DNA of 64,000 bases from Macrostomum lignano. Taxonomy: Eukaryota. Where the stretch lies: NCBI GenBank assembly GCA_002269645.1, contig NIVC01000608.1:294684-358683 (forward strand), in the 5' to 3' direction. Below are positions 5,991 through 50,663 of the stretch, one piece after another; position 1 is the first letter of the stretch; every line of letters begins with the position of its first letter. Made by a program: the position numbers and the translations under genes. The notes beneath the pieces were generated by a model. It saw nothing but the letters and a program-made list of their open reading frames with translations. It was not told the DNA's origin and did not search any database.

Positions 5991-6169
5991 TGTAAATTAG
6001 TTCGATTTTACTCATTTTGTTATTTTGTTTATGTGTTATTAATGAGGGTATTAATTGAAATTGAGTATTTGACATACTAATTGCAAGGCTGTGTGGGTCC
6101 CATAGATTGCAGGTGCAATGCTAGCTCGACCCATTCAGTGCTAGATGCAGAAGCCCATGACTCACCTAG

Positions 6170-25918: not shown

Positions 25919-28468
25919 TCAATCGTCCTCAGCCGCGTCGCCGCCAGCCAGGTTGCCCTGCAGTTTGGCCAAGAAAGTGGCCTTCTTTTGCTGCACCCGG
26001 TTGCGCTTCTGCTCCCGGGACATCTTCTTCCGGCCGTAGCGCTTCGGCTTGGCGCCATCGGCTGCTGGCGCTTTCTTTTTCGGCGCCTCCGGCTCCGGCT
26101 TGGCGCGGATAGCGGCGTGCGCCTTGGTGTACATCTGTTCGATGCTGTTCTCGTCGACGCCCTTCTTCAGATAGTCGGAGAACTGGCGCTGATAGGCCTC
26201 CTCGTCGTCGGACTTCAACGAGCGCATGTACTCGGCCACGTGCAGGCCGAGGATCTTCTTGCGGTGCTCCTCGGCGCTGTGGAGCAAATTTAGTTTTATG
26301 TATTGTTTGTTGCTAATAGTAATAGATTGGGGCCAAGTTTTCACCGCATTGTACGTGCCAAAATATGGATCGCACATCAAAGATGAGTTGTACATTATCA
26401 GTCGTTGGATTTGATGCTTTATTCGATAGCGGTAAACAACCGCCATCCCTGGCCGAGACAACATTCCGCTGGATGTCGGTGTGAACCGGCGCAGCCAGGG
26501 CATTCACTGCTTCACCGACGGCTCGCTGTTCAACGGCCGCGCTGGAGCGGGTATTGCCATTTTCCACGAGGGTAAGATGCTTCTCCAGGAAAGTCTGCAC
26601 CTCGGTGAGAACACCTCAGTTTTCCAAGCTGAAATTTGCGCCATTGAGCAGTGTGCCCAGCAACTGTTTCAGGCGAACATTAATAATTTTGACATTAATT
26701 TCTACACTGATAGCCAAGCTGCTATTAAGGCCTTAACCACTGAGAATATCTCCGCTGCTACAGTATCTCAATGCCACCGCAGTGTGCAATCTCTCTCAGT
26801 CCTTAACAGGATTAGAATTATCTGGACACCTGGTCACAGCAACATCCTGGGCAACGAGCTCGCGGACTCTCTCGCCAAGGAGGGCAGCAACCCAGACGGC
26901 AACCACCGTCTGATGAGGCTACCCACCCCCAGGTCGCAAGTCACCCGCCATATCAACAGGTGGCTCCATCAGCAGCACCAGCTCCACTGGAACAGCTGCA
27001 CCGAGTACAGGCAGAGCCGCTCTGCCATGCCTAACCTGAACAGGAAAGTCTCTGATTATCTGATTTCGCTTAACAGAACCGACCTCAGGGAGATGTGCAT
27101 GGTCCTAACCGGCCACGGATTCTTCCAGAGACATATATCGTTGCAAACCGGTTGCCCTCCCACCTGTCCCTTCTGTGGCATAGGAGAGGAGACCGCGGAG
27201 CATCACGTCACCTTCTGCCCTTACTTCAACAAGGCGCGGCACAAATACCTCGGCCACCCCCAGCGGATGGACGAGCTGACCACCGCGGACAATATCCGAG
27301 ACCTCCGCGCCTTCGTCCGGGACTCCGGCCGGATGAGGGTCGCCGATGCCTCCACTGCGGACCTGCCGACTACTGGCGGGGACTGGGCGCACCCCCAAGG
27401 CTAATCCTTGTGCTCTTTTACCTTGGGGTTGCGATAGGGGCCTCGCGGCCTATTCGCGGCGCCTGCGCCCCCCGTCAGTAGTAAGTAAGTAAGTAGCGGT
27501 AAACAACTCTATACGCTACAAGAATCCGCCCAGTTTTTGCCTAGCCTATATATAGCCTTTATATTACTTAATGCAAGGATATTACGCTTTTGTAAGACCC
27601 TATCACATGTACAAACAGCTCCAATTACATGCAGGTGGAGTAAGTGTTGGTGCTTTTCTGCGTTGAGGTAAAACGAAGTGTATGAAAGTGCGCACTGAGG
27701 ATTTTTTGTATGTGACTGGCTACCGGGGGCCGGGGTATCCCGGTGAAGGACCTGAGTTCGATTTCGCGAACGGCCACATTAATTTGCCCACAAGTCACAG
27801 TGTGAAAAAGTTTGGCCGCGCGAACCAGCCTTTACTATGGATGGTAAAAAAAGAAAAATTACTAGTATGCAATAGAATCTACTCAAAACTGCTCACCTGT
27901 ACTGCTTGGTCGCGGCGCTATAGCCGGGGAAGCGCTTATTCGAGTGCGGGATGTCCAATCCACCGTCGACGGCGCCCTTAAGCGCGCCGAATACGCGCGC
28001 CCCGGTGGTGGTGCGCACCAGGCCGACGTCCAAGTAGCAGCGGAACGCGCCAGGCTGACCGTCCGGGCTTTCAACGATGAACTCCTCGCCGTCGGCCTTC
28101 TCTTTGCCAACGTAGATCGAGTCCAGCTTGAGCTTCTTGATCATTCGCCTGGCCAGCAGCAGGCCGGTGGCGTAGGCCGAGGCGTAGTTCTTCAGGCCGA
28201 CCTTCACGCCGTAGCGGGGCAGCTCGTGCGCGTAGGCCGAGCAGATCACGTGATCACCTTCGATTCTAGCATAGACAATCTGGCAGATGATGTCCTTGTT
28301 AGTGAATCGGACAACCATTCGGTACTTGGGCGTGTTGTACTTGTTCTTATCCTGCCAGATCAGCCTCTTCCTGGCGTAATAGTCGGTTTTACCCTGGCGA
28401 CGCCTCTTAAACTTGACCTGATACCGCTTGAAATAAGCGGTGGTCTTGGTGATCTTGATGTAGCCCAT
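25919..28468 (-). CDS. RPL5: 60S ribosomal protein L5 (uL18); complement(join(25919..26276,27897..28468)), 309 aa
   Basis: Unmistakable RPL5 sequence ([25 protein letters not shown]...FPGY...|[11 protein letters not shown]). Donor GTGAGC at 27896, acceptor cacag at 26277, AATAAA at 25798-25803. Confidence 0.98.
26441..27493 (+). mobile_element. 5'-truncated non-LTR retrotransposon (RNase H + CCHC 3' end) in the RPL5 intron, antisense; ORF remnant 26442..27404
   Basis: TSD TAGCGGTAAACAAC at 26427-26440 and 27494-27507; (GTAA)n tail. RNase H motifs FTDGS, FQAEI, TDSQAA, WTPGH, GNELAD; CPFC...H...CP knuckle. Confidence 0.92.
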
Positions 28469-29542
28469 GGCCCTGAAAGTTTTTGTTTAAATACGAATTC
28501 TTGCAGCAGATTGTATCGATTGTTTTCAGTAACTTGTGGAAATTATCAATAGTAGAAATGGCTGAGTGATTCCAATAGTTACTCTAATGCTGTGCATATT
28601 TTATTACCTGGTATCTGCCATATAAAGGATGCCCAGTTTATTTTTTTAAACTTTTTTTGGAATCTGTCTGAACACATACATATACCTATATATGCATTGA
28701 ATTTTTATTTTAAAAACTAATTAAGTTGGATTCTTTTTATTGTTAATGTAGCTAACGTCTAATCTACAGTATTGATAAAAGTTTATCTTAAAACAATTTA
28801 AAATGATGAATTATTATTTAGACAATTTAGATTTATACCTAGACTTAAAAGTTCAGATTATTAGTAAAAATGCAATTGAGAATTTTCATAGACAATAAGA
28901 TGATAATATTTAAAACATATATTTTTCAAATGTTCAATAGCTAAGCATTGCATCGAAAAAATTTAATATTTTTCATTAATTTAATTATTGGACGGTTGGC
29001 AACCTCAAGCCCGCAGGCCACATCTGGCCTGCAAAGACTTTCTATGTGGCCCACAAACTTCCTCTATCTTCATTACTATAATCTGGCCCACACCTTTGTA
29101 ATGTAGTAGGGCATTATTTTAGAAACGGGAATTAGTAGCGAAGCAGATATGCTTTTGCCTACTGTCAGTAGTTTAGGTTTGGGAAAGTAATTAGAGCAGG
29201 GGAAAATTGCTAGTTTTTGGGATTCTCTAGAAGTATAGAACAGTTTGGGGCTTAGGAAAGCAGATTTTTCGCTGGCTGGTGGGAGATCTCAGAAATTAGG
29301 AAGGTAAGAGGCAGGGAGTATTGGGAAAATTTTAAGTAAAACTGTCGAGGTAGTTGATGACAAAACAGTACACCTACAGGTAGTCAATGCCTGACATTTT
29401 GCACCAACCATTGCATGCCATTTTCATTTTGTTTTTTTTTAAGTATAAAACTTTTGTTAATTAATTCGGTTTTTCTGAGTCAATCCTTTGTCTCTACAAT
29501 AATAGGACTAGGGAAACAGGAAGCCTGGTGGCAGCAAATCTA

Positions 29543-35605: not shown

Positions 35606-36898
35606 GATTCAGTTTTCAATAGATGTAGGGAATAAATTGGCACAAATATGAAAAAAGATTAAAGTTTTATTATGGGTAGGCCTATTTAGTTTCAAATCTA
35701 TTATTATTGCATCAATATTTATAAATATGATTGATTAGGCCTAAACATGATAATTAAATACAACCATAGTTATTAGTATTATTAATTTGCTAATTCATGG
35801 TTCAAAGAAATTGAAATTGATAGGCCTATAATAGAGATTCAATGTTTTGGCCATCTTGGTCTTAAGTTACACCCTTTCAAGTTTCAACCCACAAACTTTT
35901 TAACTTCAACTAGCCTTAGGAAATATGCCATAATAAAAATCTTAGTATTTCTGTTGAATTTGAAAATTCAAATTCAAACTTAAAATTCAAATTCAAACTT
36001 AAAATTCAAACTTCAAACTTAAATTCTAATTCAAGTTTAAAATGCAAACCTGCAACACTGGTGCAACACCTGGTCTTGGACCTGGTTCTGTCATCAACAC
36101 CTAAACCTGGCCATTGAAAGAAGCAGCAGCAGCCACCCAATGCGAAACCTAATGCAATGGAGTGCTAACTTGCTCTTTCTCTAAAACATCTTGCACTTTG
36201 TTCAAGAAGCGATAAATGAGAATGATCAGGCGCAGAGGCCACAACTTGGCTCTTTCGGTCCATGAATCTTGAGCAACGTGATGACTGATGAGCAAGAGAA
36301 AGAAGCAGGTAGCAAGTCCAAGTACGAAGAATACTTGAACGCCATCTTTGGGCAGTCTGTGACAGTTCGCAAAGACCTGGAGTGCCGAGACCAAAGCCAA
36401 GGCAAGGCCAAGGGGACTTATTTAGGCCCTAATGTAAAATTTGGCAATAGTGCACAAATATAACCTATACCAAATCTCAATTTACTTATCACATACCCTT
36501 TGTTCTAAAGTTTGGCATAGGCCGCATAGCATACGTTACATCAGATGTCATTCAGCGACTTGAAAAGATGAAAAATTGTGTTAAGAAGCATAATTTAAAA
36601 TTAAATAACACACGAAATTGAACATTATATGTGCAATGAGTATAACAATGCAAATACCATAGGGCTTTTAAAAAGATGCTCTAAGGTCAAAATAAGACAG
36701 AAGGAAATAATTTAAGAAGTTGTTTACATTTAATTTCTGAACTAAAATATTTTGAGGGTTTTGCTTAAAGATTGAACTCTACCGGGTTGACTTACTTTGA
36801 CTTAGCTGCAGGGTGGTCCGTAGACACAGCGGGGAGGCGAGGGTCGCCCATTCCGCTAGCCCCTGAAGGCCCGCAGACAGGCAGAGGCGTGGGGCCGG

Positions 36899-39800
36899 TC
36901 AGGGTGGTCCGCCGGTCCGTCCTGCAGCGTGATCTTCCGTTGGGAAGAAACTGGCTCGTCTAGTCGCCCGAAGGAACTGGATGAGCCGTGGGATGCTGTC
37001 GGGCTGGCAGACCTCGTCAATGGACGGGTTCGGCCCGAGGTAGCGTAGCCGGTCTCTGTTAAAGAAAGGGCAGTGACAGACAAAGTGCTGAGCATCTTCA
37101 TTGTCGCACTCGCAAAAGGGGCAAATTTCGCTCTCGAGGTCGCCTCGGAGGAAGCAGTGCCTGGCGAGGTAGCCATGGCCGGTAAGGGTCATGACAAGGG
37201 CTCGAATATCCTTCCGATTCTGGTTCAGAAGGATGTTTCTGAGCCTGTGAGACGGGCAAGGAACCGCGGCACGAGATTGCCGGCAGTTTTGGGTGCCCGC
37301 CCATCTGTCCCTGTGGAGGGAGTCAGCCCAGTCGTCGATCTGACGATTGATGACTGTCAAGGGCATAGGGACCAGGGGGGCAGGGCCGAAGAAAGAGCCA
37401 GAGCCGCCCCTATTGGCGAGGGTGTCTGCCAGCTCGTTCCCCGGAAACCCTGCGTGCCCTGGGATCCACTTCAGCCTGACAGTATTGCTTCTGGCCAGGA
37501 GGTTGAGCTGCCGGGCGCAGTCGGCGACTGTCCGGGAGATCGTTGTGGTGTGGCAAAGGGCCTGTAAGGCCGCTTGGCTGTCAGAGTGGATGACAATAGT
37601 CTTTCCTCTCGTAACCTTGGCGTTCAGCTCTGCAGCGCAAGAGCTGATGGCAAGGACTTCGTTCTGGAAGACTGTGGAGAGTCTACCAGTGTGCTGGGCA
37701 TGCGTGGCAATTACGCGGCCGTTGATGATGATGCAGACCCCAAAGCCGGCGCGACCGTCTTTGATGGATCCGTCCGTGTAGCAATGGACCTCCTGGAAAT
37801 TCCAGTGGTCATTGGCAGCATCCCTAGAGGGGATGGTGACCTTGTAGCGCTGAAAGAGGTTGAGAGTGCGGGGTTCGCCGTCAGATAGGACGTGGAGCCC
37901 GCCGCTGTCTCTCAAGTCCTTGAGGCAGAGGTCAGCGTGGGGCAGAAGCTTGCGCTTAGCCATGGCCCTATGGGGCTGGATTCGAATGCCAGCGTCAGCT
38001 AGACGGCGGGCAGTCTTAGCCGCTTCCCTGCGGACAAAGATGTCCAGCGGAGGAATGTTGAGGAAGGCGTTGAGGCCATCGAAGGGAGCAGACGGAGGGG
38101 CGCTCATGATCGTGCGACAAGCGCGCCCTTGCGCTCTCCTGAGAGCCTCTAGACAGGTCTTTATCTGCAGGGCGCTAGCCCAGATCAGGCCGCCATACGA
38201 GATAGCGGGCCTAACCATTGCAGTGTAGATCCACCAGAGGCGCTTGGGGGTGAGCCCCCAGGTGGTGCCGACAGCCCTGCGCAATTGCGCGAGGACTGCG
38301 AAGGCCTTTTTGGCTTTTGTTTGAACGTGGGGTGACCAGTTCAGCCTGTGGTCCAGGGTAATACCCAGACATTTAGTCTGCTTGCAGAAGGGGATTTCCC
38401 TTCCGTAAAGCGTGAGCGGCCGAATCTGCCACTTGGTCCTGCTGGTGAACATGATCGCTGCGGTCTTAGTCTCAGAGAGCCTTAAACCACAGCGGTCCGC
38501 CCATTGCTCAGCAGCGTAGATGAAGTTCTGAAGAAGGTCCCTGAGGGTATCAGGGGACGGACCAGATGCCACCGCGGTGACATCGTCCGCATATCCAACT
38601 TTCAGAATGGGGTCAGGCCGAACAACCCGGAGGAGCTCATCGATGACCATATTCCAGAGAACTGGAGACAGCACCCCACCTTGCGGGCTACCTTTGCAGA
38701 CGGGGACCGTCCTCTGGTAGCCCAGCAGACTGGCGGTGGCCGTGCGATGGCTGATCATGTACATGATCCATCTGGTGAGATGTGAGTGCGTTTGCCTCTC
38801 ACAAAGAGCTCTTCGGAACGCCTCAAAGAGGACGTTATCGAAGGCGCCAATGATGTCCAGGAAGATCCCCAGAGCAAAGCCACTACCAAGCACGGCCTTC
38901 TCGAGTTTATCGACCAGGACGTGCAGCGCGCTTTCAGTGGAGCGACCCGCCCGAAAAGCGTGCTGGTTCTCGCTGAGAGGTTTGTTCTTCAGCTCAACAG
39001 AGAGAAGGCGCCAAAGCACCAGTCTCTCCATCAGCTTGACCAGGGAGGAGGTCAAGCTGATCGGTCTGAAGGATTTGATAGAATGGTAGTCCGAGCGGCC
39101 TGGCTTAGGGATAAAGATCACCTTTGCCTCGGTCCAAGCCTGTGGGACATAACCAAGCGTGATGCATGCCCGAAGAAGGCTGCAAAGTTTGCGCAGGAAG
39201 CCTGGGCATTTAACCGCCTCTCTTAGAAGGGCCGGTACAATGCCGTCGGGTCCTGGGGCTTTGAAAGGCTTGAAGGAATTTGCCGCTCTCACAATGCGGT
39301 CCTCCGTGATGATAGAGGCAGCCAGCGCGTGACCTCCCTCCGAGTGATCCGGAGTGGTCTGGTTAGCTGGCTCGTTGGGGAAAAACGCAGTGAGCATTAC
39401 ATCAAGCGTTTCCCCTGGGTTGTCCGTGGACGTACCGTCGGTGCGTTTGACCGAGGAGAGCTTAGACATTTTGTCCAGCGTGAGCGCTTTCACAACTCTG
39501 GAGGTGGGGCGTGAGCCCTCTAGCTCCTCACAGTATTGTCGCCATTTTTGAGCCTTTGCATTCCTAACCTTCCTTTTAAACTCATGAATTGCTTCATGAT
39601 AGGCGGTTTGGTCTGCAGGGCTCTTAGTTTTAGTTGCTCTGCGGTGGAGTCTCTTAGCCCTGCGACGGAGGTTGCCGAGCTCGGGATTCCACCACGGCGC
39701 TGATTTTTTCCCTTTATAGGCTTTTAAAGGGCAGGACGCCTCAAAGGCGGCGGTTAGCGTCTCTGTCAAAACAGTCGCGCACTCATCCGCCTCTCGGCAC

Positions 39801-40603
39801 GACGTGATCGTGGATGGTTGGCCAGGAGACCGATGGAATTCCTTCAGGGCGAGCCCGAAGGTTTCCCAATCCGTATTTCTGGCGTTCCGTCTCCACGTAA
39901 CACGAGTTGCGCTACGCGCGGCCATTAGGTTGAAGGAGATGAACTTGTGATCCGAGAGTGAGGACACTGGAAGCACCCGCCACGCTCCAATACTCTGGTA
40001 GAGTCTGGGCGTTGCGAGCGTAGCGTCGATCACCTCCGACCACCGTCCGTTGTCAAAGGTAGGGGTGGACCCAGAGTTGCAGAACTCGAGGGTCGTAGAG
40101 GCAACGTAGGCTAGGAGGTCTTCGCCTCTCTGATTAATGCCAGTGCTGCCCCAGTGAGTGTGGTGGGCGTTGATGTCGCCGGCAACCATGAGCTCGTAGT
40201 TTTTGGCAGAGCAGAGCTCTACCAGCGTAGCGAGGGCTCTGGGGACGACCGCAGCATCGCCTGGTAGGTAAACCGAGGCAATGAGGGTGGTCTTCCCAGG
40301 AAGAAGGTCCTCGGATTGGATGACGCAGATGTCCCTGTTGGACAGGTCCGATCTGAGCCACGCACTGAGCGTTTTGCTCGCAAAGATGCAAGCTCTGGGA
40401 GGCTGGTTGGCCTCGCGAGGGTAAGTATAAAAACAATTGTAGCCAGCAGGGGCGTTTTGAGGCTTACCTCTGAGAGTCCAGGGTTCCTGGACGAGGATGA
40501 GCCCCGGCTTGTCGAGCTCGGCGTAACGCATAAGGTTGACCGAGGCTGCGACGCAGTGCTGCAGATTAATCTGCAGGCAATGGATTCCTTGGTTGCTGAT
40601 CAT
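36899..40603 (-). CDS. LINE ORF2 (1234 aa from ATG 40603): AP endonuclease, reverse transcriptase, RNase H, CCHC knuckle; uninterrupted
   Basis: APE: QINLQH, LVQEPW, GDINAHH, IDATL, SDH. RT: KAPGPDG, FRPISL, QHAFRAGRST, PQGGVLSP, YADD. RNH: YTDGS, SDSQAAL, WIPGH, GNELAD. Knuckle: CPFC...H..CHC. Confidence 0.97.
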   Translation of the reverse strand: MISNQGIHCLQINLQHCVAASVNLMRYAELDKPGLILVQEPWTLRGKPQNAPAGYNCFYTYPREANQPPRACIFASKTLSAWLRSDLSNRDICVIQSEDLLPGKTTLIASVYLPGDAAVVPRALATLVELCSAKNYELMVAGDINAHHTHWGSTGINQRGEDLLAYVASTTLEFCNSGSTPTFDNGRWSEVIDATLATPRLYQSIGAWRVLPVSSLSDHKFISFNLMAARSATRVTWRRNARNTDWETFGLALKEFHRSPGQPSTITSCREADECATVLTETLTAAFEASCPLKAYKGKKSAPWWNPELGNLRRRAKRLHRRATKTKSPADQTAYHEAIHEFKRKVRNAKAQKWRQYCEELEGSRPTSRVVKALTLDKMSKLSSVKRTDGTSTDNPGETLDVMLTAFFPNEPANQTTPDHSEGGHALAASIITEDRIVRAANSFKPFKAPGPDGIVPALLREAVKCPGFLRKLCSLLRACITLGYVPQAWTEAKVIFIPKPGRSDYHSIKSFRPISLTSSLVKLMERLVLWRLLSVELKNKPLSENQHAFRAGRSTESALHVLVDKLEKAVLGSGFALGIFLDIIGAFDNVLFEAFRRALCERQTHSHLTRWIMYMISHRTATASLLGYQRTVPVCKGSPQGGVLSPVLWNMVIDELLRVVRPDPILKVGYADDVTAVASGPSPDTLRDLLQNFIYAAEQWADRCGLRLSETKTAAIMFTSRTKWQIRPLTLYGREIPFCKQTKCLGITLDHRLNWSPHVQTKAKKAFAVLAQLRRAVGTTWGLTPKRLWWIYTAMVRPAISYGGLIWASALQIKTCLEALRRAQGRACRTIMSAPPSAPFDGLNAFLNIPPLDIFVRREAAKTARRLADAGIRIQPHRAMAKRKLLPHADLCLKDLRDSGGLHVLSDGEPRTLNLFQRYKVTIPSRDAANDHWNFQEVHCYTDGSIKDGRAGFGVCIIINGRVIATHAQHTGRLSTVFQNEVLAISSCAAELNAKVTRGKTIVIHSDSQAALQALCHTTTISRTVADCARQLNLLARSNTVRLKWIPGHAGFPGNELADTLANRGGSGSFFGPAPLVPMPLTVINRQIDDWADSLHRDRWAGTQNCRQSRAAVPCPSHRLRNILLNQNRKDIRALVMTLTGHGYLARHCFLRGDLESEICPFCECDNEDAQHFVCHCPFFNRDRLRYLGPNPSIDEVCQPDSIPRLIQFLRATRRASFFPTEDHAAGRTGGPP

Positions 40604-40605
40604 TA

Positions 40606-41949
40606 TCACGCAGTTGGGGAATCGTTGAGCAGGTCATCCTCCTCCTTTTCAGTGGTGGGTGACCCGCAGACCTCCATGGGAGTTTCAGCGTCCTCAGCAG
40701 TTAGGGTGGCTGTGGAGTCCTCCGCGGACGTGAGCCCAGCGTGGACGTTACCGTCGCCTCCCCTGCGTGCTTCGGTGCTGTCACTGCCCGTCCCCTCTGC
40801 CTCGTCGGTCAGGTCGATGCGGGTGGCGCCAGCCTCCTGGTGAGTCACAGACTCGAACCAGTCGGTCGGAGCCTCCCCGCTTAGAGTCTGGCCTTCTGGC
40901 TGTTGGGGTGGAGCGCGAGAAGCGCGGGCCCGCTCACGATGCGCACGAAGGTTCTTGGCCTGGTCCAGCGCGCGCTGGATCAGGCCGGACCTCCGGGTGC
41001 TCCTGGCGGGTCTGCGATTGCGATTTCCGGTTTCAGCAGCGCGAACTGCCTTACCGGGCATAGGATCGGCCGTTTGCCTCGGCTTCTTTGCCGGAGGAGC
41101 CTGGGCCCCAGTTCCGGTTTCGGAAGCTTTGGCATTCTTGGCTTCATCAGCTTTCCGCTCCTCGCAACGGAGGATGGTCAGCTGAGTCAGACCAATATGA
41201 ATTGTGGACTTAGGCGGCAAGCGCTTAGCCCAGTCATCAGAGAGCCCTAGGATCACCGTAGCCCCCTTCTCCTTGCGGGAAGTGGCGTGGTGTAGGAGCC
41301 CGTTGACCTCAAGGTCGGGGTGCAGCTTTAGCAATATTTGCCTAAGCTGATCTCCGGACTTAATGGCACTGCCGGCCGGGATCCAGACGCGAAAGCGCTG
41401 GGTCTTCTGTCGTTCGCCTTCGCTGGCGAAGACGAGCTTGCCGAGCTTCTTGGGCCAGTTCAGCTTTGGCAGAAGCTCGCGTAGATTGCGGCTGCTCTCC
41501 TCCGAGCTGCACCAGATGAAGATGCAGCCGTCGGTCTTGGCAGACTTGACCACGCTCACAGGGCGGCCCGCCAGGAGCTGGTCGATGAGCGCAGCATCGA
41601 TGGTGCGCCAGGCACTGTCGAGCTCGTCGGCCGTGAGGTCCTGCTCTTCCCCGAAGACGATGACCGCCGGTTGGAGCTTGACCTTTGAGGCGTAGTTGGT
41701 GGCGGCGGTTCCCGAAGGCCCGGCCGCGCTTGTAGCAGATATACTGGGTGGCTCACCAGCGGGGGTTGTATCCTGGGGGGCAGGGGTTGCTGTGGTTCCT
41801 TTCGGCCCAACAGCAGCCTCGCCCTCCCTAGGTTCCCCCTCCGCCGGTGGCCGGCCCGCAGTACCCCGTAGTCGCCGTCGCCGCTCGTTGCGGCGTTCGT
41901 TGCGGGTGCGTCGGGCTTCAGCGGAGGGCCCGGTTGCGCGTGCGGGCAT
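40606..41949 (-). CDS. LINE ORF1 (447 aa; possibly starts at 42071 across a 1-nt frameshift), DUF4780-like core
   Basis: Position immediately 5' of ORF2 inside the TSD-bounded element. Core FRVWIP...LKLHPDL...IHIGLTQLTI resembles LOA-clade ORF1s (by eye). Basic disordered termini. Confidence 0.8.
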   Translation of the reverse strand: MPARATGPSAEARRTRNERRNERRRRLRGTAGRPPAEGEPREGEAAVGPKGTTATPAPQDTTPAGEPPSISATSAAGPSGTAATNYASKVKLQPAVIVFGEEQDLTADELDSAWRTIDAALIDQLLAGRPVSVVKSAKTDGCIFIWCSSEESSRNLRELLPKLNWPKKLGKLVFASEGERQKTQRFRVWIPAGSAIKSGDQLRQILLKLHPDLEVNGLLHHATSRKEKGATVILGLSDDWAKRLPPKSTIHIGLTQLTILRCEERKADEAKNAKASETGTGAQAPPAKKPRQTADPMPGKAVRAAETGNRNRRPARSTRRSGLIQRALDQAKNLRAHRERARASRAPPQQPEGQTLSGEAPTDWFESVTHQEAGATRIDLTDEAEGTGSDSTEARRGGDGNVHAGLTSAEDSTATLTAEDAETPMEVCGSPTTEKEEDDLLNDSPTA

Positions 41950-42073
41950 GTCACCGGCCGAGCCGGCGGCAAGCCCATCTGCCCCGGTGGGGCGGCGCTG
42001 GTGCCAGAGTCACCGGCCGGAGTTGCCGGGGCCCCGGCTTCAGCGGGGTTGAAAGAGGCGGATGACGCCATAG

Positions 42074-42133
42074 CTGAAAGCGGGAAGGAGTGAGCTGAGT
42101 CACAAAAAAAGAGGAAAGAAGAAAAAGAAAAGG
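42074..42133 (-). promoter_or_regulatory. 3' splice-acceptor-like signal (30-nt pure pyrimidine run + TTTCAG) 2 nt upstream of ATG 42071
   Basis: Minus strand CCTTTTCTTTTTCTTCTTTCCTCTTTTTTT-GTGACTCAGCTCACTCCTTCCCGCTTTCAG|CTATG. Confidence 0.6.
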
Positions 42134-42291
42134 ACCGCTAGCGACCGGACAACCCCCCGGCCTTCCAGCCCATCGGCACGGTCAAACACCTTAGGCATTA
42201 GGGGGTACGTTAAGCAGTACCACGGCCTGCAGGCTGGCAGGCCAGACCCGCATACCCAAATTTGGCCGAAGCCACTGGATGGGTCGCCAGC

Positions 42292-42542
42292 GTCGGAGCC
42301 CAGTCTGTCCAGCAGCCCTAGGGTCTGCCTTGAACACACGCGGGGACGAGTACCCTGGGTCGACTTGTGAAACAGCGTGAGGGGGGGGGTCTGCGGCTGC
42401 CAGCGGCAAATAGCGGGTGCAGACCTCCCTCTCCAGCCTTGACCTGCTGAAGATAGGGGCAGGCGTGAAGCATCGCAGACCGTAGCCCATAGGCCTGGTC
42501 TGTCTCATACTTCACTGGCGTGCTGAATACACCTTCGCGTGC
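42292..42542 (-). ncRNA. HDV-like (nested double pseudoknot) self-cleaving ribozyme forming the LINE 5' end
   Basis: P1 GCACGCG/CGCGUGU with G1.U wobble; P3 GGG/CCC; L3 UACUCGU; P1.1 AC/GU; P4 hairpin; J4/2 CAGAC with catalytic C at 42307; P2 GUCG-A-CCCA/UGGG-CUC-CGAC. G1 coincides with the TSD-defined element boundary. Confidence 0.8.
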
Positions 42543-45285
42543 CTACCGGGTGCATACTTTGGGCTATCCATCTGGGGCACAGAAAGATGTGCGAGGCAGG
42601 TAAAGCCATATTATTATACTAGTTTTTCAACGATAATGAGCCAAGTAAAGGCTTTGTGTACTGATTTTACTAGTAGATACTAGTAAATTATCTCCGCGTG
42701 TATGTTGTGAGCTGCGCCGATCACGGGCCCCTTGACCCGGCACTCTCCGCCTATCCTCTCCCTGCCGCTGGTTCATTCTGGTCGGCCTCCGTCTTAAGCT
42801 GCCATTCTTTATCTTATTTTTCTCGCTTTCATTTTCGCGTCTTGGCGTCAAGCTCTCAAGATCTCTCTCGTTTGGCCTAGCCCAAAGTCTCAGCGCGGAG
42901 GCCGCGGTTAGAATTAAGCCTCCCCCCTTCTTTCTCTCTCGCCCTTCAGCTCTGAGTTTTGCCCCTAACCCCCAGCTAAGGTTGCACTTAATATAATAGT
43001 CCTACGTACTATACTTTATGTTGTACAGTGTGTTGTAGTCTTCTTGGTTATACAAGTATACACATGTACATGTATGCATGGAAATTTGTGTAGTTGGCTG
43101 ATAAATCTCGTTTTATGCATGTTTCTCTTGTGCATGTTGCATCCAAATTTATTTCATCACCCTTCTGTGCTCTTTATTTTCTCTTTCCTTATTAATAATT
43201 GCTTCTATCAATTGCTTTTCAATCATAAAATCGTGTATACACTGGTGGAACTCGTGAAAAGGGGATTTAATTGTGGTCGCAATTTTGCTGCAAAATTCAT
43301 ACTATACATATGCCGGACAATTAATTACCTCAAATTGCTATGCAATTTAAGGATTATTATAGAACACATTTTTGGTTGACCTGATGATGAGGTAGATTCA
43401 ATTAAAGACAGTTTTTTAATAGAGCCTGTAAAGTTAAAAATCATGCAATGATAGCAGCTGAACCAAATTAAGCTAGCTCTATCATTTTCTGCAATAAATT
43501 TCCCATTTCCTTTTGATAAAAGATCCTCGCTCTATATTTATGCGATTCTTTTATGGTAAATAGAGTTTTACTGGGTTTATGCACATGCCCTACATGATTT
43601 TGAACCATATGCAAAAAGTTGATCGATAGTACTGTATGGTGAGGAGAGCTTCGAAAAAGTTGCTTCATCGGATATTAGCAATGCAACTATGCAAAAGTGT
43701 GTCTAAATGACATGTATATGACCAGCCTTCACTGGTAAAATATACCCGTACTTTTAACTAATGGTTCTTTAAATTAAGATGAAAACGAACTGCAGGTAAT
43801 ACACTGTAATTGGAGGTTCAACGCTTTTATAATATACATCTTTGAATTGCCGCGCGCGGTATACATAACTATAATTGTGGGCTGCAGTCTACTCTCCAGA
43901 ATGGACGGTAGCTAAGTAAATATAAAACAACGCCTGATCCCATCATATATTCCGATACGCTGCAACCAGCTCAGGAAAAATTCAAATCCCAACTTTAGCC
44001 CTATAGCTTTACATGCTTATGGCAGTACGCGCACAATTTATGTCAACAAAGTCAAGTTTGCATTAGATAATTCTCAACCAGCTAGTGTAAATAGCAGAGC
44101 TTGTAGCAGTGCCGTTTTGGAAGTACGAAGTTAATCTACATGTATAAGTTTAGGAACTGACATTATTCACCATGGCTATAATGTGTATTTGAAACCTTGG
44201 CAACATGCAAAATTTAGTGCAAAAATAAAATTCTCATCGATGACTCAATTTTCGACAACAACTGATTGCTATGAGATAGAGTAAAATTTATTGTCGAATA
44301 TATATATAATAAAATCTTCTAAAAGTCCTAAAACAAAAAGCTTTATACGTCCAACAATAGGGTGAAACAGACACAACCCATTCTTTGGCTGATTGGCCAA
44401 ACAGAGCGGCATGATTATAAACTACTAAAGGTGAATTTAGAAAAGGGAACAGATCGATAAAACAGCATATTGTTGTTTGCCGATGCTTTTGGCTCATTTT
44501 TTATTTCTAATATTATAAGCAGATTTAGTGGCACCTGTACAGAGTGGCATCATATGTTAAGGATTTTCTGTTGCCTCTAGAAGGGGCAATTCACCTGCAC
44601 AGCATAAAGTACGACGTAGAAGGGCACTAACACTTGCAAATCGTTGCTTCTAATTGTGATTTCGAAGCAATACAATAAAATTTTCCAATTGTTTTAAAAT
44701 ATGTTTTAAATCTGTTTTTTATTCTATGAAGTTTCTAAATAGAATGCCCGCTGTTCGAGTATACAATAAGTAAATTAGTTCACATTCTATGGTTAGAAGG
44801 TCCGAGGCTGTACTTAATAGTCTAGAGGCAAGCGAAGCAAGGACTTATTAACAATAGATTTTGACCATATAGTATGACCATAAACTTTTTAACCATACGA
44901 GTTTATGACCATAGACTATGACCATAGACTATTTAACCTTAGAGTAATTTAACAAAGATGTAAACGTTTACATAACTTTAACTATAATTTTACCATGGAC
45001 GATAGACAAATATTAGCTTGAAAAATACGTGAATTAAACCTTGGACAAAACCCACGGCTTCTATTTGCTTCATTTAAAATTCGAAATTTATGAAAGCGAG
45101 ATACTGTTTCTTTCTCGCTAATGCATTTTGAAGCAAAAACCGGTCAATATCTACAGGGAACTTGTTTTCATGATTTGCAATTGTATCGTCCTACTTTGAT
45201 AGCTCGTAGTTATCCATAAATGAAGATTTCGCACAATAGGAGTTCCCAGGGGCACCACCTGGAGCTTGAAACTCAATCGAAACCT

Positions 45286-46328
45286 TTAGTTGGTTCTCGT
45301 CCGGCCCTTGTGAGGCACCTGATCTTCCTGATGCCGTCTATGGTGATGTTGCCTTCGCTGTTGCTGCTTTCGCTGCCGATGCTTCTCGGCGGCATCTTCG
45401 TCAACATCGCTGCCGCCGTCGCATTCGATGCCATCCTCGTCGCTGTCCTCTTCGCCAGGTTGATGAGCAGCCGCCGGCTTCGCCCGGCCTAGCGGTGGCA
45501 GCCGACGCGGCACGATGAAACCTTCGTGCGACTTCGACAGTCCCGTGGTTGGATGATGCGGCTGCTGCTGCTGCTGCTGCCTTTGCCTGTCTGTGTCCGT
45601 AACTTCCACCCGAACTGAGTCCGTTTTGTACTTTTGCAACAGCCGCGTTGAGACGTCCTCCGGACCGCGAGAGTGCGGCTGCCAGCCTGAAACGGCGTTA
45701 CTTTGAACCGACGACGAGTGATTGCTGCCGCCCTCTCTACTGGCGTGCTGGAAGTCGTCCTCCGTGAACATCAGGCCGCCGCCGCCGCCGCTGCTACTGC
45801 TGGGATGCCGGTCTCGCCGTTGATACGAATGCGGCACGGCACTGGCACCGGCCGCGCCCCTCGGCGAGATGGCTGCCAGATGGTGCTGATCGTCGTGTCC
45901 GCCTGAGGCGGCGTAGCGCGGACTGCCGCCACCTGCTGGCGTCCTCGGCGTCCTCGGCGTCCTCGGACTCTCCGCCTGCGACGGGGCCCGGCGCCGGAGA
46001 TCGACAGTTTCGTCCAGCTCGGCTGGCGTCGCCGACGGCAGCTGCTGACCGTTGGCAGCGTCGCCGCCGCCCCAGGTGCTGCTCCGCGACTGTCGAACCC
46101 GGCCAGTGCGCTGGCGCGCGGCTCGCGCGGCGACTCCTCGGACTGCTCGCGGAAGCCGTCGTAGACGCTGGTTGGCTGCTGCGAACGCCTGACTGGATGG
46201 TGCGGCAGCTGCTGCTGCTGCTGGAGCTGCGGCTGCGGCTGCTGAGTCTGATAGTGATGTGGCTGGCCGCGTCTGTCGCCAAGAAGGCCGCTAGCGGAGA
46301 TTGACAGCTTATCAAAATGCCGATCCAT
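45286..46328 (-). CDS. Unknown low-complexity (Q/S/G/R-rich, disordered) protein, about 347 aa if a single missing base is restored
   Basis: GC-rich coding-like island. The frame from ATG 46328 reads plausibly in its 5' part, and a second frame is open from 46290 to the stop at 45286. Length 1043 nt = 3n+2. Confidence 0.5.
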
Positions 46329-48129
46329 TTTTAAGCGTTCTCTGGTCAGCTTTGGGAATCCACTGTATACTGACTGAACTCACTGTGCTTAAAAGTGACT
46401 ACAAATTGACGTCGTTGAATCTGAAAACATTGGCTTCGCTGAAGAGGCCGCTTGACCAGAAAATGGTTTGCTCCAAATTTTATTGTTCTTGCAAGCCAAT
46501 GCCGAAGCTGCTTTTGCTGCTTGCTGGCTGCCCAGCGAGTCCGCATCAAACTCAGGCTCCCCCTGTTACACCAGCTGGGCCCGGCCAAACACGCTCTAGA
46601 AATTCCCTTCCCCCCACTTCCTCTCCTCTCCATTTCTCCCTCGCCCACTTCGCTCCCCTCGCACTGTATGCCTTCCCGCCCAGCTGTACCACCAACTGAT
46701 TGTACAGCCACCTGCTATTCAGGGGAGAATCAAACTCATGAGAGATGGCGAAATGGCGGTATAAAGCCCATGCAAGCCTATTCTTAACTCATCACACTTG
46801 CGTCCTTTTGTACTTCTCAGCCCTCTCCCTCTCTCTCTGGTCTTCCTGAGATCCCCCATCTCATTTGGCTCACGTAATGACAGTGGGAAAAACAGTGCAA
46901 TTCATTCTCTATTTTATGCAAGCACGGGAGCTGGGAGTCCAGTGTTTCACAGGCAGCTTATGTAGGTGAATGCTAGTAGGAATAGGGAAGCAAGTATTGG
47001 AAAAGAGGGGTGAGTAGAGGAACTTACTAGTCAACGTACAGCCTTCTCCCCCTACTCTTTACTCTTAGTTTCCTAGACAACAGAGACAAATATTTTATAA
47101 CAGAGCTATAGGCCTTCTTTAGAAGCACATTAGCTCTCGCCTCTCGCTGTGTCTCTCAGGTAGTAACAATGCAGTTTTAGCTTAAAATTTTTAGTACCAT
47201 GATAGTTTTACTTCTTTATTATAGTTTCTGTATAAAGTCTGGTGTTTGCCTACTAGTAATAAGTATCGATTTTTTTCGTAGTTTTGTACTGAATTGTGAA
47301 ACTTAAATCTTTTAACTTGAATTATCTTAACTGTGTATTTGAGTTTAAAATCTATATATAAAATATAGACATAAAGATTTTACGGGATAATATATTGGAT
47401 ATTACCAAATAAAATCCCGGAGAACGTAAATAATACCCCTGTTTAATTCCTTTCTTTGTTGTCTCCCCAACGGGGGCTGATTGTTAGTTAACTTTCTAAA
47501 AATAAATCCGTATTTCTAATTTAAAGTAGAATAAATCTACTGTGTATCAGATACTTTATTCATAGACTACTTGTAAGTAGTACCGTCTGCGAATTTTTTA
47601 ATATGTAAGCAAAAAGGCAGCGAAATCGCATGTAAATATTACCTGCATTTATTGCTATTTTATTTCATAGGTTTCTGAGGAACTGTTTATTTAATTGTAT
47701 AAAATTTGAATTAGCTATATAGTCAAAAAATTAGGTAAGAAATAAACAAAGATTGTTAAAAAAGTATTTTCATTGAGTAGAATTGTTGAGTACGAGAAGT
47801 GCTTTCAACACAAATCAGTTGTCATAAATATCTATTATATTTCGATATTTGCAGAAGGGAATGTTATGAGAGCTATAACCGTGCTAATTAACAATGTATT
47901 TTTATGTGCATATATAGTTAGTATCAAAACTTTTGCGTGTGTAACACTTAATGTCTTGTGTTGCTAAATAAATGTTTATACAAGATTCGAAGCAAAGTAC
48001 GAGTTTATACACTGTAGACTTCTGCTGCCAAGCTGATTCACGGTTAAGGAGATTCTCAGATGCCTGCAATCGTGTTCAATCTGGCTGTGTAACACTGAGG
48101 GGAGGGTAGAGGTTGGGGAGTGAGGCGGT

Positions 48130-48676: not shown

Positions 48677-50663
48677 TTAAGAAACGTGCATCGAACTTCC
48701 GGTCACGAAACCTTTCGGTCCGTGGTTCCGCGTGTAGCAGCCGCGGCAAAACACTTGGCCCTTGTGCTCGGACTCGCCGCCCGGTTCCAGCGGCTTGGAG
48801 CAGTCCTCGCACTTGAAGCAGGCCCGGTGAAACACCCGTCCAGTGGCCTGGAGGCGCTCGTTGAAATACACCGAGCCGGAGCAGCGGGAGCACTTCTCTC
48901 CGCCGCCGCCGTACTTGACGGCGCTTGGCGAAGGTCTGGCCGTGGCGACATTTTCAACGTGGTTCCTGACCAGTGCGAGATTGAAAATAAATGAGTTGGA
49001 TCAGTCAGTCAGTCAGTCAGTCAGTCAGTCAGTCAGTCAGTCAGTCAGTCAGTCAGTCAGTCAGACAGTCAGACAGTCAGTCAGTCAGTCAGTCAGTCAG
49101 TCAGTCAGTCAGTCAGTCAGTCAGTCAGTCAGTCAGTCAGTGAGTCAGTCAGTCAGCCAGTCAGTCAGCCAGTCAGTCAGTCAGTCAGTCAGTCAGTCAG
49201 TCAGTCAGTCAGTCAGTCAGTCAGTCAGTCAGTCAGTCAGTCAGTCAGTCAGTCAGTCAGTCAGTCAGTCAGTCAGTCAGTCATTTAGTATTTGTTCAGC
49301 TCAGCACAGGAAATATTTGTTCAAAGAAATGTGTTATTTGAGAGAAATTTGTCACGTGCCGTGGTCGGCATGGCTTCTCAGAGAAAGCCAATGGAATGAG
49401 AAATCTCTCAGGTTTCCGCCAAAGCCAGCAAGTGTTGCTTGTGTGTCACAATTAACACTCATGGCGTTGTCCCGCGAGGCTTGTTCTCTTCGCTCTTCGA
49501 ATAAAATTAACAATGTGACCGCATTGAGTCATGAGGTACACATTTGGAGAGAGAATCAAAAAGATAGACGGAGAAAGACTTGCTGCCAGTTTGTCTTTAG
49601 CAAAGTAGTATTTAAGTAAACAAGAAGCAAGGCTCTGCATATTGGCATTGCCAGTGTCTGAGGAACTCGACCTGTTGTGCAATTTTAGCAGCTGAATGCA
49701 TGAGGAGAAGGCAGGAAGTTCGTGTTTCACTTGCTATATGACGAATTGGAGCCTTTACATGTATGCCAAGCTATATTGCAATATATTAGCACAGGAAATC
49801 AAATGGCTCAAATTCCATTACATGCTTAGTGAATAATTCAACCAAATTCATTTATCTCCGCAACTGCTCACTTTTCTAAGTCATTTATTTCTGATGCAAA
49901 AATATTTTATAGAAAATTTAAGAGGTCGAATTGAATCAGGTACGCAAATTGAAAAACGAAACATTCGGTTTGATGAAATCGAATTTTAGAACTAGAAAGT
50001 GCAAATTATTTTATGGGCGTGTGTTGTTTTAGTTTGACTGCTGAACCTTTCCTGTCACTTTTAAGTCTCAAGCTTTAATCACTTACTTTTGAACCGAAAA
50101 GCTGAAATAATATTTCAAAAGTTCCGAATACATATAAAAACGAAATGCACGAAATTAATAAAATTAATTAAACGATTATAGTTTTTTCTAAGGCCGTGAT
50201 TTAAAGAGATTATGCACTCACGGCTGCCCCTCTGATTGCAGTCCGGCGGCTCCGCCAGCAAAGCCGTATCCTTTAGGACCGAAGTTCTTAGCGTAGCAGG
50301 CCCGGCAGTAAATCCTGTCCTCGTGGTCGTTCACCGTCGATGAGTCAAGCAGCTTATTGCACAGGCCTAATAAAGTATAAGATATAATCCTCACAGTCTT
50401 TCAGAGATATAAAATTAAGAATCGCTTCATTTAATTATAATTCCTGATCTCGCAACTTTTGAGTAGTAACTATATACAATCTCTGCTACAAATCGTGAGC
50501 ATAAAATTGTTTTTTAATCCAAAAAGTGAAATGCTATAGAAATTTACTTACAGCATTTCAGACAAAATTTATGGTACGAATTCCTAAGACATTTCACTTC
50601 CTCCGCAAAGTACACTTTCTTCTTGCAGGCTGGGCATGTAGGTGAGCCACCAAATGTAGGCAT
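48677..50663 (-). CDS. CSRP: Cysteine- and glycine-rich protein / muscle LIM protein, two LIM domains; complement(join(48677..48965,50222..50366,50552..50663)), 181 aa
   Basis: LIM1 CPACKKKVYFAEE...HKFCLKCCLC...IYCRACYAKNFGPKGYG; LIM2 CSRCSGSVYFNE...HRACFKCEDC...VFCRGCYTRNHGPKGF. GT-AG junctions in phases 1 and 2. Confidence 0.94.
49001..49283. repeat. (TCAG)n microsatellite, about 70 units, CSRP intron 2
   Basis: Directly visible; causes the SQSV ORF 48843..49619. Confidence 0.97.

What the first reader, a model, noticed from the sequence alone, without database searches (positions are those of the whole stretch)
42069..42542. Candidate new system: ribozyme-cleaved retrotransposon RNA re-capped by spliced-leader trans-splicing
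Seen: about 160 nt after the ribozyme there is a 30-nt pure pyrimidine run, branch-like CTCAC/TGACT and TTTCAG|CT-ATG, the same TTTCAG as the host RPL5 and TMEM170 acceptors, yet this genomic copy retains the whole leader. Established: HDV-like cleavage leaves an uncapped 5'-OH, so R2-type elements are thought to rely on cap-independent initiation; SL trans-splicing caps RNAs at an unpaired 3' splice site. Inference: the ribozyme leader acts as an outron. Spliced RNA becomes capped mRNA for ORF1/2, and unspliced RNA remains the full-length TPRT template that regenerates the ribozyme, separating mRNA from genome as retroviruses do by cis-splicing. I know of no description of this, but could not search the literature. 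The element lies 2.7 kb downstream of same-strand host transcription, which could supply read-through RNA.
Basis: partly seen in the sequence, partly recalled or inferred. Interest (0 to 1): 0.85.

Follow-up and report, generated by a model that had tools for sequence, protein, structure and literature searches.

The report
Ribozyme-led flatworm retrotransposon with splice-acceptor-like leader
A full-length jumping gene in the flatworm Macrostomum lignano starts with a self-cutting RNA and carries, just before its first gene, a conserved sequence resembling the sites where this worm adds a capped leader to its mRNAs; whether the leader is really added there is untested.

Summary
The sequence features are real. 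On the minus strand lies a 5,755-bp non-LTR retrotransposon (42542..36788) flanked by a 9-bp target-site duplication. ORF2 (endonuclease, reverse transcriptase, RNase H) is intact; ORF1 has one apparent frameshift. The host is Macrostomum lignano.

The first 251 nt fold as an HDV-like double-pseudoknot ribozyme. Its cleavage site is the first base of the element. Two relatives (L001, L002) show compensatory changes in P1, P1.1, P2 and P4. Rfam does not detect it.

A 31-nt pure pyrimidine run (42134-42104) and TTTCAG (42079-42074) sit 2 nt before the ORF1 ATG. TTTCAG matches the published M. lignano trans-splice acceptor motif [T/C]TNCAG. A pyrimidine-rich, AG-free stretch ending in YTNCAG lies 2-6 nt before the ATG in both relatives. 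None of the three leaders has a GTRAG donor. The long tract itself is not conserved.

No RNA evidence could be obtained, so spliced-leader (SL) addition is plausible (about 0.4) but unproven. Cap-independent, IRES-like initiation is the main rival. LINE cis-preference and an out-of-frame SL AUG count against the "division of labour" model. SL-bearing flatworm retrotransposon copies have been suggested in print; the combination with a ribozyme has not.

The parts
42543..42551 (-). 5' target-site duplication ACCCGGTAG
   Evidence: Read directly; identical 9-mer at 36779-36787
36788..42542 (-). Full-length non-LTR retrotransposon, 5,755 bp
   Evidence: Bounded by the TSD. ORF2 domains by Pfam. 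Nearest hits are M. lignano proteins. Single copy in the window.
42292..42542 (-). HDV-like self-cleaving ribozyme (predicted). RNA positions, with position 1 = 42542: P1 1-7/201-207, P2 179-182/248-251 and 184-187/241-244, P3 188-190/198-200, L3 191-197, P1.1 192-193/208-209, P4 214-232, J4/2 233-240 with C236.
   Evidence: Anchored descriptor met; 17 of 3000 shuffles pass. Pair tables with compensatory changes in L001 and L002. No Rfam hit.
42365..42535 (-). J1/2 peripheral domain of the ribozyme (171 nt); holds the most conserved primary sequence of the leader
   Evidence: Alignment with L001. Fold z-score -2.63. Hairpin 28-36/70-78 read by eye in the window (one search confirms only the L001 pairs), with two A-U to G-C exchanges between the two.
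42135..42291 (-). Structured post-ribozyme leader domain, including the donor-like GGTATGC (42256-42250), which forms the UGGGU strand of a conserved ACCCA/UGGGU helix
   Evidence: MFE fold closes GCUGGCGACC with GGUCGCUAGC. Helix strands conserved in L001 and L002.
42104..42134 (-). 31-nt pure pyrimidine tract, specific to this lineage
   Evidence: Predicted unpaired. Only short counterparts in L002 and L001.
42074..42094 (-). Splice-acceptor-like element: CTCAC branch-like motif, an AG-free pyrimidine-rich stretch, then TTTCAG (42079-42074). A spliced exon would begin at 42073.
   Evidence: Matches the host motif [T/C]TNCAG. Conserved in L002 (TTTCAG, 2 nt before ATG) and L001 (TTACAG, 6 nt before ATG).
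40606..42071 (-). ORF1. The N-terminus MAS... is conserved with L002. Broken by one apparent frameshift; no other breaks seen.
   Evidence: L002 ORF1 gives a weak DUF4780 hit.
36899..40609 (-). ORF2, open over 1,236 codons: AP-type endonuclease, reverse transcriptase, RNase H. Intact.
   Evidence: Pfam. 99% coverage by the relatives' ORF2. PDB hits to LINE-1 ORF2p, R2 and TRAS1 endonuclease.
36788..36898 (-). 3' UTR ending ...CTAAGTCAAAGTAAGTCAA, with no poly(A)
   Evidence: same terminal motif in L001
36779..36787 (-). 3' target-site duplication ACCCGGTAG
45289..46379 (-). Same-strand open frames 2.75 kb upstream; a possible source of read-through RNA
   Evidence: No Pfam family, so gene status is unverified.

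Best explanation
This is a full-length APE-type non-LTR retrotransposon of Macrostomum lignano.

Steps supported by sequence evidence:
- It has no visible promoter of its own. It is probably transcribed as part of host read-through RNA.
- It frees its own 5' end with an HDV-like ribozyme that cuts exactly at the element's first base.

Inferred steps:
- Downstream of the ribozyme lie a structured domain and then an unpaired pyrimidine-rich stretch ending in TTTCAG, 2 nt before the ORF1 AUG.
- This is most likely a working 3' splice site.
- Ribozyme cleavage removes any upstream host donor, and the leader has no donor of its own. The site is therefore unpaired and receives the host's 35-nt capped spliced leader. 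That gives a capped ORF1/ORF2 mRNA.
- RNA that escapes splicing keeps the ribozyme and leader. It is the only template that can give complete progeny.
For: Element and ribozyme:
- The TSD defines the 5' end at 42542.
- The anchored HDV-like descriptor is met with P1 7/7 and a G1-U wobble; 0.6% of shuffles pass.
- Against L001 and L002 there are at least 6 double compensatory changes in P1, P1.1 and P2, plus a wholly exchanged P4.
- Contig L001 starts at the same predicted +1.

Acceptor:
- M. lignano trans-splices about 30% of its genes at [T/C]TNCAG (PMC8629364).
- TTTCAG, TTTCAG and TTACAG lie 2, 2 and 6 nt before the ORF1 ATG in three leaders. The adjacent sequence has otherwise diverged or been replaced. 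Chance is about 3% per sequence.
- An 18-19-nt AG-free pyrimidine-rich zone precedes each site.
- No leader has a GTRAG donor.
- The tract-to-AUG region is predicted unpaired.
- Host RPL5 has the same TTTCAG-N4-ATG layout.

Precedent:
- Partial SL sequences are attached to LINE/LTR loci in flatworm genomes (PMC12582326).
- S. mansoni retrotransposons 'might bear the SL' (PMC5832876).

Established knowledge: an unpaired acceptor is sufficient for SL trans-splicing (Conrad et al. 1993, as cited).

From my own knowledge: downstream operon genes are trans-spliced although their pre-mRNA 5' ends are uncapped.
Against: - No RNA evidence of any kind.
- Only three leaders, two of them fairly close, so there are about two independent observations.
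- The 31-nt tract is not conserved.
- In window and L002 the G of the AG is also the -3 purine of the start context, which could explain its retention there.
- The SL ends in AUG. Joined at 42073 it is out of frame and opens a 41-codon overlapping upstream ORF. The same would hold for RPL5.
- LINE proteins prefer the RNA that encoded them (my own knowledge). SL-mRNA would then be the RNA copied, giving leaderless dead copies.
- L1Tc, the ribozyme-led element of an obligate trans-splicer, lacks the SL.
- Two distant relatives (L004, L005) have no CAG next to the ATG.
- No SL sequence lies in the window.
Confidence: 0.4

Rival explanations
1. Cap-independent (IRES-like) initiation. The ribozyme-released, uncapped full-length RNA is itself the mRNA. 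The ribozyme and structured domain, followed by an unpaired pyrimidine-rich stretch before the AUG, recruit the ribosome. This is the route proposed for R2 and L1Tc. The CAG is kept as start-codon context or by descent, not as a splice site.
For: - It is the accepted view for HDV-like-ribozyme elements (PMC6765202; PMC3185411).
- The leader is a conserved, structured RNA.
- The tract-to-AUG region is predicted unpaired.
- In window and L002 the G of CAG sits at -3 of the ATG.
- It is compatible with LINE cis-preference.
- The upstream region is pyrimidine-rich and AG-poor even in distant L005, which has no nearby CAG.
Against: - It gives no reason for a full YTNCAG to end the pyrimidine stretch in L001, where an indel moves it to -6 and C occupies -3.
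- The leader fold is not more stable than shuffles (z -0.98).
- In a host that trans-splices, an unpaired good acceptor would be expected to be used anyway.
Confidence: 0.3
2. The acceptor works in cis. When a copy lies in an intron or downstream of a host gene, host donors splice to the TTTCAG. The result is a capped chimeric host-exon/ORF1 mRNA (gene-trap style) rather than an SL-capped one.
For: - The same acceptor evidence as above.
- The element depends on host read-through.
- M. lignano gene models fuse host domains to this family's ORF2 part.
Against: - Co-transcriptional ribozyme cleavage would detach upstream donors.
- The chimeric gene models contain the RNase H end, not ORF1. No M. 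lignano protein with ORF1 similarity was returned. They therefore look like annotation run-ons over 5'-truncated copies.
Confidence: 0.1
3. No function. The pyrimidine run is a lineage-specific low-complexity expansion in a repeat-prone genome. The YTNCAG near the ATG is inherited chance.
For: - The tract is not conserved.
- The window is full of simple and tandem repeats.
- YTNCAG occurs about 21 times per element.
- Only three sequences are available.
Against: - The motif keeps its place before the ATG, while the 60-100 nt upstream were replaced between window and L002 and an indel shifted it in L001.
- The AG-free pyrimidine zone is shared by all three.
Confidence: 0.15
4. Ordinary 5'-UTR intron. 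An internal donor such as G|GTATGC (42256-42250) is spliced in cis to the AG at 42074.
For: GGGTAY is present at the homologous place in all three leaders.
Against: - GTATGC, GTACAA and GTACGG are poor matches to the host donor GT[G/A]AG.
- The conserved GGGU is the 3' strand of a conserved ACCC(A)/(U)GGGU helix around a GGCUUCGGCC hairpin, which explains its retention.
- A retrotransposed element would lose a spliced intron unless unspliced RNA were the template.
Confidence: 0.05

Closest known systems
R2 retrotransposons with a 5' HDV-like ribozyme (Eickbush & Eickbush 2010; Ruminski et al. 2011, as cited)
   Same: A 5'-terminal HDV-like ribozyme releases the element RNA from a host co-transcript. 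It has a large J1/2 insertion. The uncapped product raises the same translation problem.
   Different: R2 has one ORF and a C-terminal restriction-like endonuclease, inserts only in 28S rDNA and is made by Pol I. This element has two ORFs and an N-terminal AP endonuclease plus RNase H, and sits in a non-rDNA site with a 9-bp TSD. Its AUG lies 220 nt beyond the ribozyme, behind an acceptor-like motif.
L1Tc/ingi elements of trypanosomatids (Pr77/L1TcRz; PMC3185411, PMC3383444)
   Same: An APE-RT-RNase H LINE with an HDV-like ribozyme that cuts at +1, in a host that uses SL trans-splicing. It is released from polycistronic or read-through RNA.
   Different: L1Tc RNA was shown to lack the SL, and an IRES is proposed. 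Its ribozyme is a compact 77 nt that doubles as a promoter. Here the ribozyme is 251 nt, and a conserved host-type acceptor precedes ORF1.
SL-bearing LINE/LTR loci in flatworm genomes (PMC12582326; PMC5832876)
   Same: Flatworm retrotransposon transcripts apparently receive the SL; partial SL sequences are found fused to elements in genomes.
   Different: Those reports describe genomic relics without a defined acceptor, ribozyme or proposed role. Here the acceptor candidate and the ribozyme are seen, but no SL-bearing copy or read.
Retroviral separation of genomic RNA and subgenomic mRNA by cis-splicing
   Same: As an analogy: unspliced RNA is the replication template and spliced RNA is a message.
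   Different: Retroviral proteins act in trans on packaged RNA. LINE proteins act preferentially in cis, which makes the analogy weak. In addition, ORF1 and ORF2 would both come from the spliced form here.
Large HDV-like ribozymes with a J1/2 (P1.2) peripheral domain (PMC4908430)
   Same: A structured insertion between P1 and P2 that can activate the core.
   Different: The 171-nt domain here carries the best-conserved primary sequence of the leader, which suggests an extra role such as protein binding. This is untested.

Membership tests
HDV-like self-cleaving ribozyme | Nested double pseudoknot: P1, P1.1, P2, P3 and P4 in the canonical order | tested here: met
   All helices found in window and L001, and the 3' half in L002. 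Compensatory changes in P1, P1.1, P2a, P2b and P4.
HDV-like self-cleaving ribozyme | Cleavage 5' of G1, which forms a G-U wobble closing P1 | tested here: met
   Window G1-U207, and G1 is the first base after the TSD. L001 has G1-C instead.
HDV-like self-cleaving ribozyme | Catalytic cytosine in J4/2 | tested here: inconclusive
   A C lies at the fourth position of J4/2 in all three (GGAC.., GAAC.., UAGC..). Its role cannot be shown from sequence.
HDV-like self-cleaving ribozyme | Match to curated covariance models | tested here: not met
   No ribozyme family up to E = 10. My inference: expected, given the 171-nt J1/2 insertion and the pseudoknots, so this weighs little.
HDV-like self-cleaving ribozyme | Self-scission activity | not testable with these tools
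   Indirect only: the DNA copy and contig L001 begin at the predicted site.
APE-type non-LTR retrotransposon (LINE) | ORF2 with N-terminal AP endonuclease and reverse transcriptase (here also RNase H) | tested here: met
   Pfam Exo_endo_phos_2 1.5e-19, RVT_1 8.5e-31, RNase_H 2.7e-13. PDB hits to LINE-1 ORF2p and TRAS1 endonuclease.
APE-type non-LTR retrotransposon (LINE) | Target-site duplication, no terminal repeats | tested here: met
   9-bp TSD. No LTR or TIR found.
R2 clade | Single ORF, C-terminal restriction-like endonuclease, insertion in 28S rDNA | tested here: not met
   Two ORFs and an N-terminal AP endonuclease. The flanks are AT-rich non-rDNA, and there is no rRNA hit.
SL trans-spliced transcription unit (outron plus acceptor) | Host performs SL trans-splicing | tested here: met
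   Host identified as M. lignano. One 35-nt SL on about 30% of genes (PMC8629364).
SL trans-spliced transcription unit (outron plus acceptor) | Acceptor matching the host motif, with no donor upstream in cis | tested here: met
   TTTCAG fits [T/C]TNCAG. No GTRAG in the leader. The same holds in L001 and L002.
SL trans-spliced transcription unit (outron plus acceptor) | RNA molecules with the SL joined at the acceptor | not testable with these tools
   No M. lignano transcript data were reachable.
SL trans-spliced transcription unit (outron plus acceptor) | Genomic relics: copies beginning with the SL at the acceptor position | tested here: inconclusive
   No SL-like sequence in this 64-kb window at up to 3 mismatches. 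The genome could not be searched.
IRES-like cap-independent leader | Structured RNA followed by a pyrimidine tract shortly before the AUG, with cap-independent activity | tested here: inconclusive
   The architecture is compatible. Activity is not testable, and the fold is not significantly stable (z -0.98).

The most novel reading that the evidence does not exclude
A LINE family in a trans-splicing animal gives one primary transcript two fates. The HDV-like ribozyme defines the 5' end of the full-length transposition template. A conserved, donor-less 3' splice site in front of ORF1 lets the host add its capped spliced leader to part of the RNA. That would solve the long-standing question of how ribozyme-released, uncapped retrotransposon RNA is translated. 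Ribozyme cleavage would itself turn the site from a cis acceptor into a trans acceptor by cutting off host donors.
Probability: 0.3. Interest if true: 0.8.

Novelty: new variant of a known kind. Interest (0 to 1): 0.58.

Why it matters
How ribozyme-processed retrotransposon RNAs, which carry a 5'-OH and no cap, get translated is unresolved. IRES-like function is assumed for R2 and L1Tc. A host-supplied cap through spliced-leader addition would be a different answer. It would also be a new use of trans-splicing by a mobile element.

M. lignano is a good place to test this. SL-read tracks, a genome browser and several Macrostomum genomes are already public, so the idea can be checked by read mapping alone.

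Apart from the hypothesis, the locus adds a well-defined HDV-like ribozyme. It has a large, sequence-conserved J1/2 domain, belongs to an APE/RNase H LINE of a free-living flatworm, and is missed by Rfam.

Tried and rejected
**Searches that gave nothing**
- Rfam, at gathering and permissive thresholds, on the window and L001: no ribozyme family.
- Exact look-up of the window's ORF2 in public assemblies: not on record.
- ORF1 protein searches, single sequence and profile: only one relative, P0080/L002. Low-complexity ORF1 swamps the word index.
- Metagenome scan with an ORF1 profile, and another with the conserved J1/2 DNA block: empty.
- Viral-contig scan: empty.
- Genome-contig scan: 3 bacterial hits, close to the number I estimate by chance (about 4) for 19 specified bases in 596 Gb; ignored.
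- Search for the 3' part of the SL in the window: none.

**Relatives that did not help**
- Distant relatives L004 and L005 (ORF2 about 33% identical): leaders not alignable. There is no anchored HDV-like solution in L004 and only a weak AT-rich one in L005, which I treat as chance.
- L003 and L006 lack the leader. P0002's contig has no DNA.

**Methods set aside**
- A MAFFT alignment of the ribozyme core misaligned P4 and P2. Pairs were therefore tabulated from explicit coordinates rather than with the count of structure pairs.
- A first, bulge-free descriptor missed the window's P4 and was too permissive. It was replaced.

**Readings rejected**
- An internal Inr-type promoter at +1: the TCAG lies 17 nt inside the element.
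- An SL acceptor at the ORF1/ORF2 junction: none.

Full report
**1. What is at the coordinates**

The finding lies on the minus strand. Read 5' to 3' on that strand, the region contains:
- AT-rich flank, then ACCCGGTAG (42551-42543).
- A GC-rich sequence beginning GCACGCG at 42542.
- A 31-nt pure pyrimidine run at 42134-42104. It is the only such run longer than 11 nt in the element and one of three runs of 20 nt or more in the window.
- Then GTGACTCAGCTCACTCCTTCCCGCTTTCAG, CT, and ATG at 42071-42069.

The only correction is that the run is 31 nt, not 30.

**2. The element**

- The same 9-mer, ACCCGGTAG, recurs at 36787-36779, directly after ...CTAAGTCAAAGTAAGTCAA. It is a target-site duplication around a 5,755-bp insertion, 42542..36788.
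- ORF2 is an open 1,236-codon frame with AP endonuclease, reverse transcriptase and RNase H. PDB similarity is to LINE-1 ORF2p, R2 proteins and the TRAS1 endonuclease.
- ORF1 starts at the ATG in question. Its N-terminus (MAS...AAPPG) and the rest align with the intact ORF1 of a relative. In this copy the frame changes once, which looks like one frameshift. No other breaks were seen.
- The nearest ORF2 hits, up to 98% identical over the aligned part, are Macrostomum lignano proteins. The host is therefore that flatworm.
- Host genes in the window include RPL5, TMEM170, a TELO2-like gene and a TPR/GoLoco gene.
- There is no second copy in the window.

**3. Relatives**

Two relatives with leader sequence were recovered:
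- L001: a Logan contig, ORF2 61% identical, with a complete leader.
- L002: a JGI contig, ORF1 68% identical, truncated at its 5' end inside the ribozyme.

Everything else was either too distant to align (L004, L005) or lacked the leader (L003, L006). Further searches came back empty.

**4. The ribozyme premise**

Rfam finds nothing. The first 251 nt nevertheless satisfy the HDV-like double-pseudoknot plan. With RNA position 1 = 42542:
- P1: 1-7 GCACGCG with 201-207 CGCGUGU, including the G1-U wobble.
- P3: GGG/CCC, with the 7-nt L3 immediately 5' of the P1 3' strand.
- P1.1: A192 C193 with G208 U209.
- P4: a hairpin at 214-232.
- J4/2: contains C236.
- P2: two parts, 179-182/248-251 and 184-187/241-244.

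Anchored at the TSD-defined first base, this descriptor is met by 17 of 3000 dinucleotide shuffles.

The relatives supply covariation:
- P1 positions 3 and 4: A-U and C-G become C-G and U-A.
- P1.1: both pairs change.
- P2a: U-A becomes C-G.
- P2b: C-G becomes U-A.
- P4 is an entirely different sequence that keeps a perfect hairpin in each.

Contig L001 starts exactly at the predicted +1. A 171-nt J1/2 insertion separates P1 from P2. Large J1/2 domains are known to activate HDV-like ribozymes (PMC4908430). Here the domain holds the best-conserved primary sequence of the whole leader. Its fold z-score is -2.63. I rate the ribozyme at about 0.85. Activity is not shown.

**5. The leader after the ribozyme**

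- 42291-42135 folds into a closed domain. From the tract to the AUG the RNA is predicted unpaired.
That explains its conservation without splicing. It also fits the host donor GT[G/A]AG poorly.
- None of the three leaders contains GTRAG.

**6. The acceptor-like element**

- M. lignano adds a single 35-nt SL to about 30% of its genes. The top motif at trans-splice acceptors is [T/C]TNCAG (PMC8629364).
- The window has TTTCAG 2 nt before the ORF1 ATG. L002 has TTTCAG 2 nt before it. L001 has TTACAG 6 nt before it.
- Each is preceded by an 18-19-nt AG-free, pyrimidine-rich stretch.
- Between window and L002, the 60-100 nt further upstream are not homologous. The window's 31-nt tract stands where L002 has about 75 nt of unrelated, partly hairpin-forming sequence.
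- So the long tract is lineage-specific, while the proximal element is kept.
- YTNCAG occurs about 3.5 times per kb in these elements. The chance of one ending within 8 nt of the ATG is about 3% per sequence. With about two independent lineages, this is suggestive but not conclusive.
- Host RPL5 in the window shows the same layout, TTTCAG-GGCC-ATG.

**7. Arguments against the outron model**

- No RNA evidence was obtainable.
- The SL ends in AUG. Joined at 42073 it is out of frame with ORF1 and opens a 41-codon overlapping frame. In L002 the frame is 76 codons; in L001 the SL AUG is in frame. The same would be true of RPL5, so this is not decisive.
- LINE proteins act preferentially on the RNA that encoded them (my own knowledge). 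An SL-mRNA would then be the RNA copied. Its copies would lack the ribozyme, the leader and the AG, and so be dead ends. A clean 'mRNA versus genome' split, as in retroviruses, would therefore need trans-complementation.
- In T. cruzi, where mRNAs are made by trans-splicing, ribozyme-led L1Tc RNA lacks the SL, and an IRES is proposed (PMC3185411, PMC3383444).
- In window and L002 the G of the AG is also the -3 purine of the start context.
- Distant relatives L004 and L005 have no CAG beside the ATG, but their hosts are unknown.

**8. Literature**

- The standard view is IRES-like initiation for ribozyme-led elements (PMC6765202).
- SL addition to flatworm retrotransposon RNA has been inferred from genomic relics. 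One study reports 597 loci with partial leader sequences, mainly on LTR and LINE elements (PMC12582326). In S. mansoni, SL sequences are found merged to transposable elements (PMC5832876).
- I found no paper that links an HDV-like ribozyme with SL re-capping.

**9. Verdict**

- Probabilities: SL trans-splicing at 42073 that yields usable mRNA, about 0.4. IRES-like initiation from the unspliced RNA, about 0.3; the two can coexist. Cis capture of host exons, 0.1. No function, 0.15. A 5'-UTR intron, 0.05.
- The element itself is a new member of known kinds (a ribozyme-led LINE). The proposed ribozyme-plus-SL arrangement would be a new variant.
- It can be tested by mapping existing SL reads.

Noticed in passing
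window 42365-42535 (-); L001 7-165: The J1/2 insertion of the ribozyme carries the most conserved primary sequence of the leader: a roughly 55-nt block nearly identical between elements whose ORF2 is only 61% identical. It includes a hairpin with two compensatory pairs. This suggests a role beyond ribozyme activation, for example a protein-binding site.
   Followed up: partly
L001 position 1: The Logan contig of the relative begins exactly at the predicted ribozyme cleavage site but runs past the element's 3' end into unrelated sequence. This could reflect an RNA 5' end or an assembly-graph break at a repeat boundary. The sample type is unknown.
   Followed up: no
window 13814-14236 (+): TMEM170 gene. 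A TTTCAG|GCG at 13834-13839 lies in frame with the ORF only 8 codons after a stop-flanked ATG. If the site is trans-spliced, the SL's terminal AUG could supply the start codon.
   Followed up: no
window 26436-27401 (+): An RNase H-bearing 3' fragment of a different retroelement lies next to the RPL5 gene (27896-28486, minus strand).
   Followed up: partly
window 36788-36898 (-); L001 about 5850-5962: The 3' UTR has a conserved block (GGGGYTAGCGGAATGGGCG...CCCTGCAGCTAAGTCAAAGT). The element ends in AAGTCAA-type repeats with no poly(A) tail.
   Followed up: no
one search hits P0003-P0013, P0020, P0050: M. lignano UniRef gene models fuse host domains (LRR, kinase, peptidase S8, ankyrin, acyltransferase) to this family's RNase H end. 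These are probably annotation run-ons over 5'-truncated copies in or near genes.
   Followed up: no
window 3289-3361 (-) and 4651-4723 (-): Two tRNA genes (Rfam 58.8 and 67.9 bits) in an AT-rich stretch, next to a 29-bp-period minisatellite.
   Followed up: no
window, many places (e.g. 4789-6100, 11933-13072, 21943-22820, 48937-49320, 58711-59733, 62953-63998): The density of minisatellite arrays is very high: 18 direct-repeat families with periods of 8-46 bp. Published figures give 15% simple and tandem repeats for this genome.
   Followed up: no
window 42261 versus L002 195-290 and L001 279-365: The window's leader lacks a segment of about 95 nt that both relatives have between GGCCAAAT and GGGTATGC. 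The segment includes a second GGGTAC...GCTTGCCC hairpin. The M. lignano lineage therefore has a shortened leader.
   Followed up: partly
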